Assembly: GCA_964019335.1 (NCBI GenBank)
Contig: OZ025661.1
Location: 62,001 to 126,000 of the forward strand
Length of the DNA: 64,000 bases
Source of the DNA: Diplonema japonicum
Lineage: Eukaryota > Protista > Euglenozoa: Diplonemea
Reading direction: 5' to 3'
Below are positions 7,594-15,390 of this stretch, one piece after another (position 1 is the stretch's first letter; every line of letters begins with the position of its first letter). The notes under the pieces are model-generated. The model ran no database searches. It was not told the DNA's origin and worked only from the letters and a program-made list of their open reading frames with translations. A program made the position numbers and the translations under genes.

Positions 7594-8821
7594 CTATTCT
7601 TTCTCCACGTTGAGCCAGTCTTTAGGAGTTGCAAGGGCATCTACCAACTTCTCTTCCGCCTCACACTTGGCTTTGTGCATGTATGTCCACCTGTATGTGT
7701 TAAGCAAAGGAAAAGCAAACATACTTCACAACAGGGGGGAGTGACATAAGAATGGACTCCACCCTGCCGTTGACCTGGAGGCCGAAAAGGGTTCCGCGGT
7801 CATGCACTAGGTTGAACTCGACATATCTGTGCAGGTAGAAGCGGTAAAAACGAAGAGATGCATACCTCCCTCTTCTGTACAGTTGCCAGTTCCTCTCGTC
7901 TTCAGTCACCTTGACCTCCCTCCTGCGCTTGATGATCTCGATGTATGCGGGCAGGAATGCTGCTGCTTGCGACTTCGCAAACTCGAAGATCTGCTCCCAG
8001 CTCATCGACGGCTGCATGTACTTGTTGTCCATGCACCACTTCTTCATCTCCGCGTTCTCCCCCTGGTACAGTGTCTTATCCGGGTTCCCGTCGAAGTAGT
8101 CGTAGAAGTGCCCACCGATGCCTCTCCCCTCTGCCCTGTGCTTGTTGCAGAAGTACTCATCAGCGTACTTCTTCAAAGGCAGGTACAGGTTGTCGCCATG
8201 CTTGTCGCATGCATCCTTCACATGCTGGTGGAACGACACTGCATCCTCTTCATACAGTACCCACGGGGTGAGGTCCATGCCCCCACCGAACCACCACACG
8301 TTGTCCTGTTCTATGGCATCGCTCTCAATGGTACCCGCCTCGAAGTACCTGTAGTTAAGGTGCACAGTGGGAATGTGGGGGTTCTTCGGGTGCAGGACCA
8401 TGGACACACCCGTGGCGTAGAAGGTCTTACCTTGAAGGTGGGGGTGCTTCTTTAGAATTGCGGGGGGAAGGTTAGCCCCAAACACTTCGCTCCAGTTGCA
8501 GCCTCCCTGCTCGAAAATGCTTCCGTTCTTGATCACCCTCGTCCTCCCTTGACCCCTTCCGTTTGGCTTCTCCCACGCATCCTCCTCGAACACAGCCTGT
8601 CCGTCAAGCTCGCCGAGTGTTTTCGTAATGTCATCTTGCACACCCTGCACGAACTCCTTGAATATTCTTCGTCTCTCATTTGCGGACTTAGCTGCCCTCC
8701 ACTTGTATCTCTTCTCGGCCTCACTCTTCTGGCAGCAACCCTGAAGAAGCTTCTGCACAAGGAGGGTACCAGCAACACCAGCCAGCACACCACCCCAACT
8801 TACCCCACCATTGTCACTCAT
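7594..8821 (-). CDS. hemF: Oxygen-dependent coproporphyrinogen III oxidase; introns 7827-7865 and 7691-7724
   Basis: PTVHLNYRYFE, WWFGGGMDLTP and RGIGG. After intron removal [41 protein letters not shown]...KDWL is restored exactly. Confidence 0.95.
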
Positions 8822-8895: not shown

Positions 8896-11800
8896 TCATG
8901 CCCACGTACAGCATGTGGATTTAGGAAGCTTGGAAAACTCTTCAGCAAGGGCCGCCATGGCGGTGGCGAACTTCGGTTTCACAGGCCCGTCTGCTTCCTC
9001 GTACCACGTGCGGGCGTTGAGCATGACCTGGTCCTGCAGCTCTGAATAGTACTTTCTTATCAGATTTTCACAACCTTTGGGTGGCGACCTTAGATTGCTG
9101 AGAATAGACACCCGCAAGGTAGCCAAGCGACGTTCTTGATTGTACTCTCGGCTGTATCTCTGCCCCTCGGGTGTGTTTTGGGATGCCTCGTTGCCAGGCT
9201 CCCCGAAATACGGATCGGGGACCAAAATAGCACTCTGAATTGACAGGGCCACCTGGTAGAGGGAGGACCCGCTGTTCCACCTCATGGAGTCGTCGTCGCC
9301 GTGCCATGTGTTTAGGAGTGACAGGCACACCTTGCCGCTCTCGTACAAGTTAGGGCTCATCCTGATAGTGCCCTCGCCAGTAGTGCGCAGCAAAAAGTTG
9401 GGAGGGTTCTTGGGGTAGGTGTCCGAGCAGATAACATCGAAGATGAACAGACCATGCGAGTAGGGCGTCCCCTGCGGCCCTGAGAGGATAATGCGCATCA
9501 CATCCATCCTGCTCTCGTCGTTCACACAGAACACACTAGCAGCAGGTAGCAGAGGGAACTGCCTCATAAGCTTCATGTCCTTCATCAGTGCTTTCCTTTT
9601 CTCGGGCACAACACTCCCCCCCATCTCAGCTATCTCCCGCCACATGGCATGCGTCTTGTAGTCATCGAAATCGCACGACTCGAACTGGTTATCCTCGAGT
9701 GCCTCCGCAAACCTGTCCTCGTCAACCCTAAGCTCGCCAGAAGGCTGCCACAAATCAACTTCCCCTGCAACTGCGGTTTCAAGGACAGAAGATTCTGCCG
9801 TATCTAAATTATCGATGAACTCCTGCAAACCCTTCAAGAACCTCATGCCACCCAGAGCCGCCCGCTCGATATCTTGAAGAGCCTTCCCGAGTACCTCGCG
9901 TGAGTAGTCAGGATGCTCACGGTACGACTCTTGGAAGACGGGGTGCCCTTTCATGAGCACAATGATGTTGATGCACACTTCAAGGATTCCGTGAAAGTCG
10001 TAGTTGAGCTCGCTAGGCTTATATAGCGTGCGGAGGTCGTCACACGTCTTGGAAAAGAGACGATTCAGAAAGTGCACCACGTAGTGGGACAGGGTCTTGA
10101 GCACGGGCCGCGAGAGGAGTGCTGCGAAGGGCTCGGGTACTGGGATGTTCAAAGGGTTCAGGAGCATTTGGAGGACCCGACAAGCACCCATTGCACCAGA
10201 CATGAAGCCCTTTGCCGCCCTGCGTTGATGCTCCAGCTTGTGCTTGTCCTGCATGGCCTGGAACTGGTTCCGTGTGGCTGCCAGCCTTTTGTCGTTGACA
10301 AACTTCTCAAGGTCATTGACCTCCGTCAGCCGCAGCAGGGAGTCATCCAACTGATGGATGGCCCCTGTCACTAGGCTGCTCAGGAAGTCCACCACATCGT
10401 CGTTCCCGCCCTCCTTGTTCAGACACGCGATCAAGCCCTCCTTAAACCTGTCCTTAATCATCAAACTCCGCAGTAACTCAATGGACTGCACCTTCGCTGA
10501 ACTGAACACGGCTTCATCCTTCTTAATATCATACCCGCCTGCCCTCTCAAGGCCCGCGTAAACCTGGAATATCAGCACAGGGATGTCCCTGACAAAGCTG
10601 GACTTCTCGATCACTGAGAACAACGAAATGGGGCTCTCGTGCTGCGAGAATAATCTTGCATTCCACACATCAGAGTACTGCGTTGCAGTGTCTCCTGTGT
10701 GCCTGTTTTTAGGCTGCAGTGATGATATGAAGCCCAGGATTTTAGCTTTCAGAAGGGTGTGCTTTCTGAAAATGTCACCAATAGACAGCTGCACCAAGAA
10801 GCCAATAATGTTATTTATGTTCTCAAGGCTAACAAGTCTGTCGGGGCTTTCATGGGATACAAATTCCAACCACGTGACAATGTCGCCCAGGAGGCACACT
10901 GGCATTGCTTTCAGTGCCTTCTCGTCTTTGCTCAGAAGCCCAAGTGCGGTGGTCGTAATTTTCGTTGTCAGTTCAATGCTTTGCGGGGACAGAAACGAGA
11001 ACCTGTAAGCGTCCAGCATCTTAGCCATTTGAATGATTTGCGGTGGGAGGTTCATGTTCCCGTACGCCTGAGCCCCGCCGTTCTGCTCAATCGCCTGTGA
11101 CAGGGCCTTGTAGTAGTTCTCCCTTAGTTTCTTGTAGACCCTCATGCAAGGCATCGTGAGGCACCTTAAGCACGACATGCACAAAAAGAACATTGTAGTG
11201 CTGAAGTTGAACCCTTCTTCCCGCACATCAACGTCGTCGCACCACTCGGGGTCGCCGCGCTCCTCGTCTTCCCATTCTGTGTGTTCCTCGATGCACTGGA
11301 TGGACCTGATGTAGTTCATGTCCACCTTGTCTCCTTCACAAGCAGGTGCCGCAAGTGCGTACATCAGCACTGCGACCTTCATGTACATCGTCTCCTCGTC
11401 GATGCGCACAGGCACGCGGTCTAACTTGTTGGCGTCGTACTCCACTCTGCTGAGATGGGCTGCGAGGTACTTCTGGCACCACTGGACTGCCAGGGGCCTC
11501 GCTGAGGTGTTCTTTAGCAAGCAAATCAACACTGTGCACACATCGTCAATGGCTGCAGAAGAAAGCTTGCGCGGGGCGGTCATAGAAGACACGATTTCCA
11601 CGTCGTGCACCTGGGGGTACTTGGGTATGGAGTCCAGCACCTGATGCAAGTCCTTGAGAGACGGCACGGCCAGGAATCGTGAGACAACAGATGTGAGCGT
11701 GTACGAAATGCTAGGATGATGCAGCTCCTGCTCCATCAGGCCAGCAAAGGAGGTAACATCAGAGGAGACAACGTGCCTGAGAATGCCTGTCACATCTGCC

Positions 11801-12747
11801 GAAGGAGGGAGGGAGGAAAGACACGTGAGGATTCTACTACCCAAGGGCTCCGATAACTGCGGGAACAACTGCCTAAAGCTCGCAGCCGAGAGTGTTGTCA
11901 GGTGGCCCTTGAGCTGCTTGTGATCCAGCTCCGTGAACCTTTGTAGCAGCAGCTCAACCAGCGCTGCTCTGTAGAAATCGGCATGCTCGCTTAACTGGGG
12001 CGTCGTTCGTACGAGGTAAGCTTGGGACCTTTCAATACACCCCATCAGGTACTTAGGGTCGGTGTTGACCAGCATGAAGAGCTCTTTGGGGTCAATGCTG
12101 CCGACGGAGTCATCTTGAGCAAGCTCCTTGAGACCCTCGAGGGTGGTGTAGTCTTCAGCGTCTGGTGCAATGACTCCAGAGATGATGATAGGGGCGGCTG
12201 TGAGGTCTTCACCCATGCATTTTACTTGCAGCACGTACCTCAGGACCCAGCCTTTGATGTCTTCCCCTTCGAAAGTCATGCTGCTGAGAATATCTCGAGA
12301 AGTCTGTGCTTTTTTAAACGATCGGGCAGCGAGGTCCTTGGCAGCTACCAGTTCTGAGAAAGTAGCTGTTTGTTCGTTCCAGATGATTGCCCGTTGCTTC
12401 GTCTGCTGCTCTTCAAACGCAGCTACCCCATCATGAACCTTGGCCACTGCAACACGTTTCAGCAGCGCTTCCCCTGTTGTTAGAGATGATGTTTGTTACT
12501 ATGTTTGCATACTTCCCGCAGCAACCTTCTCTGTATTGAGCTCTTTTTTTGCGCTCTTTGCGGGTGAGACAGAGGCAGCTGCAGCCGCGATGCCCGCAGA
12601 CACACCACCATTCTTATTGATGTAAAAATAAATAGCGACCGCAATCAAGAGCTGGGGGGGTTTTTTTTTTTGTCGCTTTTTTTTTTGTCATACCCCCCAT
12701 ATATACACTGCCATGGGCGACCCCTGCACCTCTTGTACACCTTCCAT
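8896..12747 (-). CDS. Membrane-anchored Ufd2/UBE4-core plus BIRC6/UBE2Z-type ubiquitin-conjugating (E2) domain fusion, ~1256 aa; introns 12652-12693 and 12474-12512
   Basis: Two GTATG..CAG introns extend ORF 8896..12447 in frame to ATG 12747, adding a TM (AVYIWGLLIAVAIYFYI). The middle has Ufd2-core-like motifs. The C-terminus is a UBC: GPQGTPYSHGLFIFD, PNLYESGKVCLSLLNTW (Cys codon 9325-9327), SLYQVALSIQS..L..DPYFGEPG. Confidence 0.85.
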
Positions 12748-13085: not shown

Positions 13086-15390
13086 CTAAGTGGTCTGTGG
13101 GCTGGCGCTCCCCGAGGATGGCACACTACGAGACATCGCAGGGTCAGTGAGGCACGAGTTACCGAGGGAAGGCGAGGCGCTAAGTGACGCCTGTTTGTGC
13201 GCACCTGATGTTGGGATGGGCCTGCTGTGGAGTTGAAGCGCGTACAGGGCACTGATCTCGAGAGTGGCCTTGAGCAGCCCCCACGTCTTGTGAGAAGTCA
13301 TCTTGGCCACGTCAAGTGCCGTCAGGCCGTACGCATTCACGAGGGATGAGTCTGCTCCGCACGACATGAGAGTACCTAAAAGTGCGACCTGTGCGGATGT
13401 GGATGTGGATGCGGTGGATGTGTACACACCTGTTCGTCAGAGGCAAACATCTTCACTGTGCAGTAACCCTGCTCATTCGACACTGCGTAGTGCAGCGGCG
13501 TGTTCCCCATGCTGTCCCTCACATTCACCGTCTCTGGGTCAGCCTTCAACAGCTTTTTCAAATACCCAGCGTCCTTGCTTTCAATCGCCATGAACACCTC
13601 TCCTACATCCACCGCCACAGCCTCCTTCGTCTTCTCACGGCATGGTAGCTCCGCCATGCTCGCAAACCCCCTTATGCTGTCTGCCCTATCCAACGACACA
13701 CTCGCCAAATCGTACATCCCTTTATAATAATACAAAAGTGCAAGCTCGCGATACAGCTGCATTTCCTGTGAGGGGGTTCTTTGTTTTGTTTTGTCGTGCA
13801 GCACACCTCTAGCTTCGGGACGCAATCCTGAAGGTCTAAGTAGTTTGTGTTCGACAGCAGCTCATAGCTCAGCTTCTTGTCGCCCTTTGTGATGCTGACC
13901 ACTAGTGACGCGTAGTCGATGCACCTCTGCTGCACCTCGTCGCAGGATTCTCGCCTGCTGGACATGAAGAGGTACACCATATCTATAGTCTTGGCCATCA
14001 GTTTGCTCGGCACTAGAGCGAAATCGAAGTTCACGTCTGCCACTGACGAGGACCGCATGGCGCTGCTGTCGATGGATATCCTGGACACGTCGTCGTTCTG
14101 CGGGGTGTTCAGCATCATGTAGCGCTCCTCGAGCTCGATGCTGACATCGTTGGAAGGCTCTGAGGCCTCCCAGTTGTGCAGCACACATCCCTCCTCTCTT
14201 GCGTTGGCCGGTAGCAGGTCAGGGAAGTGGGCCAGTACCTCCCGCACGTCGATGTTTGTCGCTGCAAAGTGTTCAAACGCAGACTCCGGCTGCCCTCTAA
14301 ACAGATATGCGAAGCCTATGTCTATGTGTGTCTGTTTCAGACGCTTTTGATCTTGCAACTCGTTGCCGGTGGAGTTCTTGTGCAGCAGCTCAAAGGCCTC
14401 AGTTGTCTTGAGACTCTCGACAAGATTTTTGACTTGTGTCTCGATAGAGGCAGAGACGAGCATATAAACGTCCTTCGCGGTAGCGATGCACAAGTTGTCC
14501 TTAGTGCCGGGGCACTTGGAGCATGCTAGGATCGCACCGCTGAGGTTGGTGAGTGCCTGGACGATTTCGCCCTCGTACATGGAGTACACCTCGACGCTGT
14601 TGGGAAGCAAACCCACCACGTAGGGGTGTTTGAAGCCTATTGCTCGAGGCTCTGCACTCCACACGATAGTGTCGTTTTTGATAGCGGGGTTGAAGTTCTT
14701 GATGTCAGCGTCCTTGAGGGACACCTTGATCGACATGTTGGCAGACCTGCACAATGCAGCGTGTTCTGTGTCTAGAGATTTGATGTGTGGTTGGTTGTTG
14801 GCAAGGGAGAAGAGACCGGTCGCTTCGCCGCTGTAGCAGTTGAGCAGGCTGTACTCCTTGTGGTACCCGCAGCAAAGCGTTTCGCCTTGAAATGCAAGAC
14901 AATGCACTGCAGAGGGCATGACAAGGACCTGGAAGAGATGGTGGCTGTTCTCAGCCAGCTTATAAGTGTAGAGGTGGAGCTTGCGCTTTGTCGCCACACA
15001 GATGCGATGTGTTCCCTTGTGGACAGGGGCTATGGCAATGCAGGAGCAGCCTTTGAGGGGCTGTGTCCTGCCACTCTCGCCATCTGTAATGTAAAAGACA
15101 GTGCTGAGGTTATCCGTCGAGTGCACTGAGACGTTCTCATCACACAGCGTGAAAATCCTGGGCCAGGTTGGGTCAACTATCATTTGCAAAACGGGCTTCT
15201 TCTTTAGCTGCACCTGGTTCAGCTGCCTGCTTACGTAGTCTTCCTTAGCAATATCTTGGTCCAATCTCCATTTCTGCATCAACCCACCCGAGGTGCCCAC
15301 GAAGACCACATTTTCCCTGCAGTCTAGGGCCGTGATCGTGTCCTTTCTTGCATCTTTTGGGAGCGTAAAGAGTTTCACCACCCGCTGCAT
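13086..15390 (-). CDS. Vps39/Vam6/TGFBRAP1-like CNH-domain protein with C-terminal ankyrin repeats, ~740 aa; introns 13766-13806 and 13389-13429
   Basis: CNH-like propeller (ITALDC...VFVGTSGG; WSAEPRAIGFKHPYVVGL..SVEVYS), IDVREVLAHFPDLLP and LYRELALLYYYKG (Vps39_1-like), then VNVRDSMGNTPLHYAV and GADSSLVNAYGLTALDVA (ANK). Two 41-nt GTGTG..CACAG introns join three ORFs in phase 0. Confidence 0.8.

What the first reader, a model, noticed from the sequence alone, without database searches (positions are those of the whole stretch)
8896..12747. Membrane-anchored Ufd2/UBE4 core whose U-box is replaced by a catalytic BIRC6-type E2 domain
Seen: two 5' exons add an N-terminal TM (AVYIWGLLIAVAIYFYI). 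The region ~9850-11540 has motifs colinear with the Ufd2 core (FNFSTTMFFL; KAMPVCLLGDIVTWLEF; KHTLLKAKIL; QVYAGLERAG; FLSSLVTGAIHQLDDSLLRLTEV). The C-terminus is a complete UBC with the catalytic Cys (PNLYESGKVCLSLLNTWHG) and a BIRC6-like lead-in (PLLPAASVFCVNDESRMDVMRIILSGP). Known: Ufd2/UBE4A/B are soluble Cdc48/p97-associated E4 chain elongators ending in a U-box that recruits an E2 in trans; BIRC6 and UBE2O are E2/E3 hybrids. Inference: this is a self-contained, membrane-tethered E2/E4 hybrid that could ubiquitinate p97-extracted substrates (ERAD or organellar quality control) without a separate E2. I do not recall this architecture being described.
Basis: partly seen in the sequence, partly recalled or inferred. 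Interest (0 to 1): 0.82.

Follow-up and report, generated by a model that had tools for sequence, protein, structure and literature searches.

The report
Membrane-anchored Ufd2-core/E2 fusion enzyme
This gene of the marine protist Diplonema japonicum really does encode a membrane-anchored ubiquitin enzyme in which the Ufd2/E4 scaffold carries a built-in BIRC6-type E2 domain instead of a U-box, but it belongs to an old, widespread and still unstudied eukaryotic family rather than being a one-off.

Summary
On the minus strand, 8896-12747, three in-frame exons encode 1256 codons. Pfam finds Ufd2P_core (E 9.5e-26) followed by UQ_con (E 1.8e-16) and no U-box. In an AlphaFold model (pLDDT 84, pTM 0.83), residues 60-891 match yeast Ufd2 residues 1-876 (Z 26-27). 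Residues 907-1178 match the BIRC6 UBC domain (Z 33, rmsd 2 Å), so the E2 starts where the U-box would sit. The catalytic Cys and the PN motif are conserved.

The two 5' introns (42 and 39 nt, GTATG...CAG) match four transcript-verified introns of a paralogue. Three diplonemid orthologues, one of them from a transcript, also have an N-terminal hydrophobic anchor.

The architecture is not unique. More than 100 protein clusters carry it, from green algae (Chlamydomonas UBC21), cnidarians, molluscs, amphioxus, sponges, haptophytes, ochrophytes, euglenids and diplonemids. Their cores form one clade apart from canonical Ufd2/UBE4 (SH-aLRT 100). I found no paper describing the fusion.

This genome has a second paralogue, soluble and ending in a UIM, which an earlier first-reader note of this scan (s1-859815) had already flagged on another contig. 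I found no canonical Ufd2. A p97-binding (VBM-like) motif is clear in relatives and degenerate here. Function is inferred.

The parts
12694..12747 (-). Exon 1 (54 nt): first in-frame ATG at 12747-12745 and a second ATG at 12714. Its last 7 codons start the hydrophobic anchor.
   Evidence: MEGVQEVQGSPMAVYIWG; no ATG further upstream in this frame. A pyrimidine-rich stretch ending in AG lies 9 nt upstream and could be a spliced-leader acceptor; that is inference.
12652..12693 (-). Intron 1, 42 nt, GTATGA...CCCAG, A-rich, with an in-frame stop.
   Evidence: It is of the same class as four transcript-verified introns (35-44 nt; GTATG or GTACTG donors; AG acceptors, three of them CAG) in the paralogue on contig C39.
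12513..12651 (-). Exon 2 (139 nt, ends in phase 1): the remaining 11 residues of the hydrophobic anchor, then a Lys-rich, low-complexity cytosolic linker.
   Evidence: LLIAVAIYFYINKNGG...KSAKKELNTEKVAAG. Positive charges follow the anchor, as in orthologues P0002, P0003 and P0032.
12474..12512 (-). Intron 2, 39 nt, GTATGC...AACAG, with two in-frame stops.
8896..12473 (-). Exon 3: the rest of the protein in one uninterrupted frame, with the stop TGA at 8898-8896.
   Evidence: The core and the UBC domain lie in one open frame, so they cannot be two genes.
9775..12270 (-). Ufd2-like N-terminal region plus armadillo-like core (main-exon aa 60-891). The Pfam Ufd2P_core part is 11595-9808 (aa 285-880).
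   Evidence: E 9.5e-26. Foldseek against yeast Ufd2 entries 3M62, 2QIZ and 9KHT, E about 3e-13. VIA Z 26-27, about 720-750 residues aligned, model 60-891 to Ufd2 1-876.
8914..9729 (-). Extended BIRC6/UBE2O-class UBC (E2) domain (aa 907-1178). The Pfam UQ_con part is 9540-9208.
   Evidence: BIRC6 UBC E 1e-49, 9QGG aligned over aa 911-1157. Z 33, rmsd 2.0-2.2 Å over 270 residues against 3CEG and 9QIV.
9325..9351 (-). Active site: Asn1033 of the (H)PN motif (here S-P-N) to the catalytic Cys1041.
   Evidence: One search gives the coordinates. P1032, N1033 and C1041 are at least 90% conserved in 44 family members.

Best explanation
This is a real, intact gene of a diplonemid (Diplonema japonicum). 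It encodes a roughly 1256-residue, single-pass membrane protein whose bulk faces the cytosol. The parts, in order, are: a short N-terminal tail, a signal-anchor helix, a basic linker, a complete Ufd2/UBE4-type N-region and core, a linker of about 15 residues, and a BIRC6/UBE2O-class UBC domain with catalytic Cys in the place of the U-box.

Shown here: the architecture, the fold, the conserved catalytic residues, and membership of an ancient pan-eukaryotic clade of Ufd2-core/UBC fusions distinct from canonical Ufd2. Also shown: a diplonemid-specific duplication into a TM-anchored form (this gene) and a soluble form ending in a UIM, and the apparent absence of a canonical Ufd2 (core plus U-box) from this genome.

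Inferred: the enzyme is charged directly by E1 on Cys1041. The Ufd2-like solenoid holds an already ubiquitylated client or chain, as yeast Ufd2 holds K29-linked chains. Ubiquitin is then transferred in cis, with no separate E2. This would make it a self-contained E2/E4 working at a membrane surface (ER or mitochondrial outer membrane), probably on clients handled by Cdc48/p97.
For: Architecture and fold. Catalytic residues conserved. Single open frame. Splice model. An N-terminal hydrophobic anchor followed by basic residues is present in D. papillatum KAJ9466960.1, in an ENA diplonemid protein, and in a Flectonema neradi transcript that holds anchor, core and UBC in one ORF. Family breadth. 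Tree of the core alone: 38 fusion cores against 14 canonical cores, SH-aLRT 100, with lineages grouping as expected; the diplonemid A (TM) clade has support 99 and the B (UIM) clade 97. Only two Ufd2-core genes exist in the 62.5-Mb assembly and both are fusions. None of the 13 U-box hits lies next to a core, and a canonical Ufd2 probe finds only unrelated U-boxes. The VBM-like motif [DE][DE][ILM]RxxRLxxL occurs in animal and diplonemid relatives and at the N-terminus of a canonical tick UBE4B. The VBM consensus and its role in UBE4B are given in PMC5559722 and PMC2654131. Yeast Ufd2 binds K29 chains through its N-terminal region and acts in ERAD (PMC5303827).
Against: No transcript of this particular gene was seen here, so the 5' exons rest on splice consensus and orthologue conservation. 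The VBM-like motif here is degenerate: the central Arg is replaced and the aliphatic position is lost. It also straddles intron 2. The model is only moderately confident (pLDDT 50-80) over the part that would correspond to the K29-binding loops of yeast Ufd2, so conservation of chain binding cannot be judged. There is no biochemical evidence for any member of the family. The target membrane is unknown. BIRC6 and UBE2O, the nearest E2s, act on non-ubiquitylated substrates, so 'E4' behaviour is not implied by the E2 class.
Confidence: 0.68

Rival explanations
1. The architecture is the same, but the Ufd2-like solenoid is only a substrate-binding scaffold. The enzyme would then behave like UBE2O or BIRC6: an E3-independent E2/E3 hybrid that mono- or multi-mono-ubiquitylates naked membrane-proximal clients. 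It would not extend or branch chains and would not depend on Cdc48.
For: The UBC domain is closest to BIRC6, UBE2O and UBE2Z, which ubiquitylate substrates directly. The VBM-like motif is degenerate in this gene. The fusion cores form a clade well apart from canonical Ufd2, so function may have diverged.
Against: The whole Ufd2 N-region and core is retained from residue 1 to the U-box boundary. Relatives keep a UBE4B-type VBM, and the sister paralogue carries a UIM, which points to ubiquitin-chain clients. The genome has no other Ufd2.
Confidence: 0.25
2. The 5' exons are not part of the mRNA. Translation starts inside the long exon (its first ATG is at residue 57) and the protein is soluble.
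For: No transcript of this gene was retrieved (one search returned only the paralogue P0001). The hydrophobic stretch exists only if intron 1 is spliced.
Against: Both introns have the length, donor and acceptor of four transcript-verified introns of the paralogue. All three exons are in one frame with the right phase. Three orthologues, one of them transcript-derived, have an N-terminal anchor at a similar distance (about 110 residues) from the conserved GW.LR.V motif. The region just after intron 2 matches D. papillatum at 5 of 8 positions.
Confidence: 0.1
3. The hydrophobic N-terminus is a cleaved signal peptide, or the UBC domain is a dead pseudo-E2, so the protein is not a cytosol-facing active enzyme.
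For: An alanine-rich stretch follows the hydrophobic segment and could look like a cleavage region. The His of the HPN motif is Ser here.
Against: The hydrophobic run is 18 residues long. In the orthologues it sits 20-25 residues from the N-terminus and is followed by basic residues, which is signal-anchor behaviour and not signal-peptide behaviour. Cys1041, Pro1032 and Asn1033 are at least 90% conserved across the family. BIRC6 itself has N-P-N at this position (alignment). A lumenal ubiquitin enzyme would have no E1.
Confidence: 0.04

Closest known systems
Ufd2 (yeast) / UBE4A, UBE4B (animals): U-box E4 chain-branching or chain-elongating ligases
   Same: The complete N-terminal region and armadillo-like core are shared: Pfam PF10408 almost end to end, and the model aligns to Ufd2 residues 1-876. 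Relatives share the N-terminal VBM-type motif of UBE4B.
   Different: There is no U-box; a UBC domain sits in its place. There is an N-terminal membrane anchor. In a tree, the core falls in a separate clade from all canonical Ufd2/UBE4 cores tested.
BIRC6 (BRUCE/Apollon) and UBE2O: E2/E3 hybrid enzymes
   Same: The UBC subclass is the same, with N- and C-terminal helical extensions (Z 33 and 26; E 1e-49 and 1e-33). The principle is also shared: a substrate-binding scaffold and an E2 active site in one chain.
   Different: The scaffold is a Ufd2 solenoid, not BIR/WD40/armadillo modules (BIRC6) or the CR1-CR3 regions (UBE2O). The protein is much smaller than BIRC6 and is membrane-anchored.
Uncharacterised Ufd2P_core+UQ_con proteins, e.g. 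Chlamydomonas reinhardtii Cre12.g510300 ('UBC21'), Nematostella LOC5513359, Branchiostoma LOC109473492, D. papillatum KAJ9466960.1
   Same: The colinear architecture and linker are the same, and the cores belong to the same clade. Animal members are also membrane-anchored. This is the family the gene belongs to.
   Different: Animal members add a signal peptide and an EF-hand-like lumenal loop before the TM helix. Green-algal members have N-terminal UIMs and no TM helix. The diplonemid A clade has a bare N-terminal anchor and a conserved Cys-rich C-terminus. None has been studied biochemically. UBC21 is known only from an E2 list, from induction under lead stress and from a gamete-cilia proteome (PMC7522501, PMC7838096, PMC9561859).
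Ubc6 / UBE2J1-2: membrane-anchored ERAD E2s
   Same: Both are E2 active sites tethered to a membrane and facing the cytosol.
   Different: Those are small, C-terminally tail-anchored E2s of another UBC subclass that need E3s such as Doa10 and Hrd1. Here the anchor is N-terminal and the scaffold is built in.

Membership tests
Canonical Ufd2/UBE4 (E4) family | Ufd2P_core armadillo-like solenoid with the N-terminal variable region | tested here: met
   PF10408 E 9.5e-26, profile positions 33-626 of 628; yeast Ufd2 Z 26-27, model 60-891 aligned to Ufd2 1-876.
Canonical Ufd2/UBE4 (E4) family | C-terminal U-box that recruits an E2 in trans | tested here: not met
   no PF04564 hit at E<=1. The residues after the core fold as a UBC domain.
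Canonical Ufd2/UBE4 (E4) family | Core groups with canonical Ufd2/UBE4 cores in a tree | tested here: not met
   14 canonical and 38 fusion cores are split by a branch with SH-aLRT 100; of 24 exhaustive phmmer hits, P0020 (E 3.5e-5) is the only canonical protein among the 20 that were scanned; four weaker hits were not scanned.
Canonical Ufd2/UBE4 (E4) family | Cdc48/p97 binding (an N-terminal VBM in UBE4B) | tested here: inconclusive
   a VBM-like motif is clear in animal and diplonemid-B relatives and in canonical tick UBE4B. It is partial in D. papillatum A and degenerate in this gene. Binding cannot be tested with these tools.
BIRC6/UBE2O/UBE2Z class of UBC domains | Extended UBC fold with catalytic Cys and the Pro-Asn of the HPN motif | tested here: met
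   E 1e-49 to BIRC6. Z 33, rmsd 2.0 Å over 270 residues. C1041, P1032 and N1033 conserved.
BIRC6/UBE2O/UBE2Z class of UBC domains | BIR domain and giant scaffold (BIRC6), or CR1-CR3 regions (UBE2O) | tested here: not met
   only Ufd2P_core, UQ_con and a sub-threshold UEV hit. Structural matches to UBE2O and BIRC6 cover the UBC part only.
BIRC6/UBE2O/UBE2Z class of UBC domains | E1-dependent ubiquitin thioester and E3-independent transfer | not testable with these tools
   This needs biochemistry.
Ufd2-core/UBC fusion family (uncharacterised; includes Chlamydomonas UBC21) | Colinear PF10408 followed by PF00179 in one chain | tested here: met
   for this gene. for relatives.
Ufd2-core/UBC fusion family (uncharacterised; includes Chlamydomonas UBC21) | Core belongs to the fusion clade | tested here: met
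   the window protein sits with D. papillatum, Flectonema and an ENA diplonemid (support 99), inside Euglenozoa (100), inside the fusion clade (100).
Membrane-anchored E2s (Ubc6/UBE2J type) | C-terminal tail anchor on a small E2 | tested here: not met
   The anchor is N-terminal. The C-terminus is the polar and cysteine-rich ...CCTWA.

The most novel reading that the evidence does not exclude
The Ufd2-core/UBC proteins are a LECA-age, self-sufficient ubiquitin chain-branching or chain-extending enzyme class that works with Cdc48/p97 at membranes. They are anchored in animals and in one diplonemid paralogue. In diplonemids they have completely replaced the canonical U-box Ufd2, so that E4 function there needs no separate E2.
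Probability: 0.3. Interest if true: 0.78.

Novelty: new variant of a known kind. Interest (0 to 1): 0.62.

Why it matters
E2/E3 hybrid enzymes (BIRC6, UBE2O) are a small and intensively studied class. Ufd2/UBE4 is the founding 'E4', and how it positions an E2 over a ubiquitin chain was visualised only recently. In this family, evolution has fused the E2 to the E4 scaffold. The family is conserved from green algae to cnidarians and amphioxus, is often membrane-tethered, often carries a p97-binding motif, and has no functional literature. In this diplonemid it appears to be the only Ufd2-type protein.

Studying it could show how chain-editing activity is built into a single polypeptide. It could also show what membrane-proximal clients it serves in lineages with tractable models (Chlamydomonas, Nematostella, Diplonema papillatum). 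The value lies in the family, not in this one locus.

Tried and rejected
- Two separate genes: rejected, because the core and the UBC domain lie in one 1183-codon open frame.
- A chance or weak Ufd2 resemblance: rejected by the Pfam score, Foldseek and VIA. phmmer of the core against PDB sequences found nothing, so the link to yeast Ufd2 is visible only at profile or structure level.
- A unique architecture: rejected.
- A canonical Ufd2 elsewhere in the genome: none found with PF10408, PF04564 or a canonical protein probe.
- A C-terminal CaaX-type lipid anchor (the protein ends CCTWA): considered unlikely. The D. papillatum orthologue ends ...CSIWSD, and the model puts the last residues in a beta strand.
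- Ten literature searches found no description of the fusion. The library lacks most subscription-journal papers, so older domain surveys may mention it.
- All searches, the fold and the tree used the long exon alone, and the short exons were read separately.
Full report
**What is at the locus**

On the minus strand there is one uninterrupted open frame of 1183 codons (8896..12447). Upstream of it lie two short coding pieces in the same frame. They are separated by 42-nt and 39-nt stretches that begin GTATG, end CAG and contain in-frame stops.

- The first in-frame ATG is at 12747.
- The exons are 12747-12694, 12651-12513 and 12473-8896.

The next gene, a coproporphyrinogen oxidase, starts 75 nt downstream on the same strand.

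**Organism**

The window is contig C14 of a 62.5-Mb assembly. A second gene of the same kind on contig C39 translates piece by piece to a protein identical to EukProt transcript EP01064_Diplonema_japonicum_P039492, apart from one retained in-frame intron. The genome is therefore Diplonema japonicum or something very close to it, a diplonemid (Euglenozoa). An earlier follow-up note of this scan (s1-861369) names the same organism.

**Domain content**

- Pfam finds Ufd2P_core over aa 285-880 of the long exon, covering profile positions 33-626 of 628 (E 9.5e-26). It finds UQ_con over aa 970-1080 (E 1.8e-16). No U-box appears even at E<=1.
- By sequence, the C-terminal 270 residues are closest to the UBC domains of fly and human BIRC6 (E about 1e-49), then UBE2O (1e-33) and UBE2Z (1e-26). 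Ordinary E2s score about 1e-10.
- The core alone finds no PDB sequence with phmmer.
- I built an AlphaFold2 model from a 44-sequence family alignment (mean pLDDT 84.2, pTM 0.83). It matches yeast Ufd2 over model residues 60-891, aligned to Ufd2 residues 1-876 (VIA Z 26-27; Foldseek E about 3e-13).
- The model matches the BIRC6 UBC domain over residues 907-1178 (Z 33, rmsd 2.0-2.2 Å over 270 residues).
- The E2 domain therefore begins about 15 residues after the point where the U-box begins in Ufd2. 'U-box replaced by an E2' is an accurate description.
- The catalytic Cys1041 and Pro1032-Asn1033 of the HPN motif are at least 90% conserved across 44 family members. BIRC6 itself has N-P-N at this position, so the S-P-N here is no sign of inactivity.

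**The membrane anchor**

The hydrophobic run is split by intron 1: seven residues end exon 1 and eleven begin exon 2. Mean Kyte-Doolittle hydropathy is 2.16 over the 18 residues. The anchor therefore depends on the splice model, which I tested in two ways.

1. The C39 paralogue can be compared with its own transcript. It has four introns of 35-44 nt with GTATGC, GTATGG or GTACTG donors and AG acceptors (three CAG, one AAG), and two of them are A-rich. The two introns proposed here are of exactly this class.
2. The three closest orthologues all carry an N-terminal hydrophobic segment followed by basic residues. They are D. papillatum KAJ9466960.1, an ENA diplonemid protein, and a Flectonema neradi Trinity transcript. 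The segment lies about 110 residues before the conserved GW.LR.V motif, as it does here. The Flectonema sequence is transcript-derived and holds anchor, core and UBC in one ORF.

The charge distribution (acidic or neutral before the anchor, Lys/Arg after it) predicts that the N-terminus is outside and the enzyme faces the cytosol. I saw no transcript of this gene itself, so the anchor is well supported but not proven. Everything was done on the long exon, and the short exons were read separately.

**It is a family, not a singleton**

An exhaustive phmmer search of 1.84 billion representatives with the core region (aa 1-940) gave 24 hits.

- Of the 20 hits scanned against Pfam, 13 carry Ufd2P_core plus UQ_con and 6 show the core alone. 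Five of those six are short fragments of 199-834 aa. The sixth, P0018, breaks off just inside the UBC domain.
- Only one hit, P0020 at E 3.5e-5, is a canonical U-box Ufd2.
- Named sources are the diplonemids Diplonema papillatum, Sulcionema, Lacrimia, Namystynia and Flectonema, the euglenid Entosiphon, and the green algae [Myrmecia] bisecta and Sanguina.

A second search, starting from the green-algal member, listed about 100 clusters with both domains.

- Green algae: Chlamydomonas reinhardtii CHLRE_12g510300v5, Volvox, Pleodorina, Trebouxia, Ulva, Bryopsis, Botryococcus, Ostreobium.
- Animals: Branchiostoma, Nematostella, Actinia, Porites, Oculina, Haliotis, Littorina, Lingula, and the sponge Dysidea.
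- Others: the haptophyte Calcidiscus and the ochrophytes Aureococcus and Chrysophaeum.

The ESM Atlas holds a 64-member cluster in which every member has both domains. Source names are 'uncharacterized protein', 'UBC core domain-containing protein', 'ubiquitin elongating factor core-domain-containing protein' or mis-transferred names.

**Tree of the core region only**

The tree used 599 columns, LG+C20+F+G4, and the quick search, with the UBC and U-box domains excluded.

- It separates 38 fusion cores from 14 canonical Ufd2/UBE4 cores by a branch with SH-aLRT 100.
- Inside the fusion clade, animals, green algae, ochrophytes and euglenozoans each group together.
- This fits one old origin followed by vertical descent and many losses. 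No member from vertebrates, arthropods, fungi or land plants appeared in my searches, although I made no targeted search for them.
- Within Euglenozoa, Entosiphon branches first. The diplonemids then split into clade A (support 99; this gene and the other TM-bearing proteins) and clade B (support 97; the C39 paralogue and relatives).
- All clade-B members whose C-terminus is known end in, or carry near it, a ubiquitin-interacting motif.
- The tree is unrooted, and it is the quick search rather than the careful one.

**No canonical Ufd2 in this genome**

A six-frame search of the assembly with PF10408 finds only the two fusion genes. The 13 U-box hits lie elsewhere. A canonical Ufd2 probe from the amoebozoan Nematostelium finds only two unrelated short U-box genes and a weak hit in the C39 fusion. 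Green algae and animals keep both kinds. So in D. japonicum the fusions appear to be the only Ufd2-type proteins. Assembly gaps and withheld stretches cannot be excluded.

**Evidence on the p97 link and on membranes elsewhere in the family**

Animal members begin with a signal-peptide-like segment, then an acidic EF-hand-like loop (Pfam EF-hand_1 E 0.003 in Nematostella, below the cut-off), then a strong TM helix (Kyte-Doolittle 2.3-3.0). After the helix comes the motif [DE][DE][ILM]-R-x-x-R-L-x-x-L.

- The same motif opens a canonical tick UBE4B (DELRRRRLARL).
- It occurs in diplonemid B proteins: twice in Namystynia (DDLRRRRLDAL, EDMRRRRLAAL), and in D. japonicum B as EDMRSKRLNML.
- It is partly kept in D. 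papillatum A (DELRRAALRRV).

UBE4B binds p97 through an N-terminal VCP-binding motif with consensus aliphatic-R-x-x-R-x-x-R (PMC5559722; the N-terminal 16 residues, PMC2654131). In the window gene, the corresponding stretch straddles intron 2. It matches the D. papillatum version at 5 of 8 positions, but it lacks the aliphatic residue and the central Arg.

A Cdc48 link is therefore plausible for the family and weak for this protein. Membrane anchoring recurs in animals, in diplonemid clade A and even in one canonical amoebozoan Ufd2. I cannot tell whether it is ancestral or was gained repeatedly.

**Mechanism**

Shown: the architecture, the fold, the conserved active site, the likely topology, the family and the paralogy.

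Inferred:
- E1 charges Cys1041.
- The Ufd2-like solenoid holds a ubiquitylated client. Yeast Ufd2 binds K29-linked chains through two N-terminal loops, adds K48 branches and is needed for ERAD (PMC5303827).
- Ubiquitin is then transferred in cis, without a separate E2.

The main rival is UBE2O- or BIRC6-style direct ubiquitylation of naked clients, with the solenoid as a plain substrate receptor. The model is only moderately confident over residues 60-130, the part that would correspond to the K29-binding loops, so sequence and structure cannot decide between the two.

**Is it known?**

Ten full-text searches found no paper that describes a Ufd2-core/E2 fusion. The Chlamydomonas member appears only in three places:
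- as one E2 in a list (PMC7522501);
- as 'Ubc21, PF00179', induced under lead stress (PMC7838096);

The library lacks most subscription-journal papers, so an older domain-architecture survey may mention the fusion. A first-reader note of this scan (s1-859815) had already flagged the UIM-bearing paralogue on another contig of this genome. I found that paralogue independently.

**Verdict**

The structural reading is right. The 'nobody has this' reading is wrong. The functional reading is reasonable but untested. This is a new, unstudied variant of the E2/E3-hybrid idea, and this gene is an ordinary member of it in diplonemids. I score interest at 0.62.

Noticed in passing
G000 contig C39, about 159,520-163,844 (locus L004 2520-6844, minus strand): This is a second Ufd2-core/UBC gene of the same genome. 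It has four tiny introns, no TM helix, a long disordered N-terminus with a VBM-like motif and a C-terminal UIM. It is identical to a D. japonicum EukProt transcript, except that one 42-nt in-frame intron stays open in the genomic reading.
   Followed up: yes
Relatives P0103, P0101, P0066, P0072, P0085, P0082 (animal members of the family): Cnidarian, mollusc and amphioxus members start with a signal-peptide-like segment, an acidic EF-hand-like loop, a strong TM helix and a UBE4B-type VBM motif. This would give a calcium-binding lumenal stub on a cytosolic E2/E4. The Lingula protein lacks the TM helix but has the VBM motif twice.
   Followed up: partly
window 8899-8913 (-), the last five codons: The diplonemid A clade ends in a conserved Cys-rich tail: CCTWA here, CCTWV and CCSWV in two orthologues, CSIWSD in D. 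papillatum. Its purpose is unknown. It is CaaX-like in three of the four, but the model places it in a beta strand.
   Followed up: partly
window 12474-12512 and 12652-12693; L004 introns: Introns in this genome are very short (35-44 nt), with GTATG donors and often long A-runs. Several have lengths divisible by three, so an unspliced reading stays in frame and is stopped only by internal stop codons, or in one case is not stopped at all.
   Followed up: partly
window 7700-8821 (-): A coproporphyrinogen III oxidase gene (Pfam E 1.6e-103) starts 75 nt downstream of the stop codon on the same strand. It has a hydrophobic, Gly-rich N-terminal segment before the catalytic domain. The tight same-strand spacing fits polycistronic, trans-spliced gene arrays.
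   Followed up: no
P0147 (Nematostelium gracile, Amoebozoa): This canonical Ufd2 (core plus U-box) has an N-terminal TM-like segment (Kyte-Doolittle 2.79 at residues 13-31). Membrane tethering of Ufd2-type scaffolds is therefore not confined to the E2 fusions.
   Followed up: no
window 13086-13825 (-): The open frames upstream contain ankyrin-repeat-like and TPR-like sequence and a His-Pro repeat. I did not examine them.
   Followed up: no
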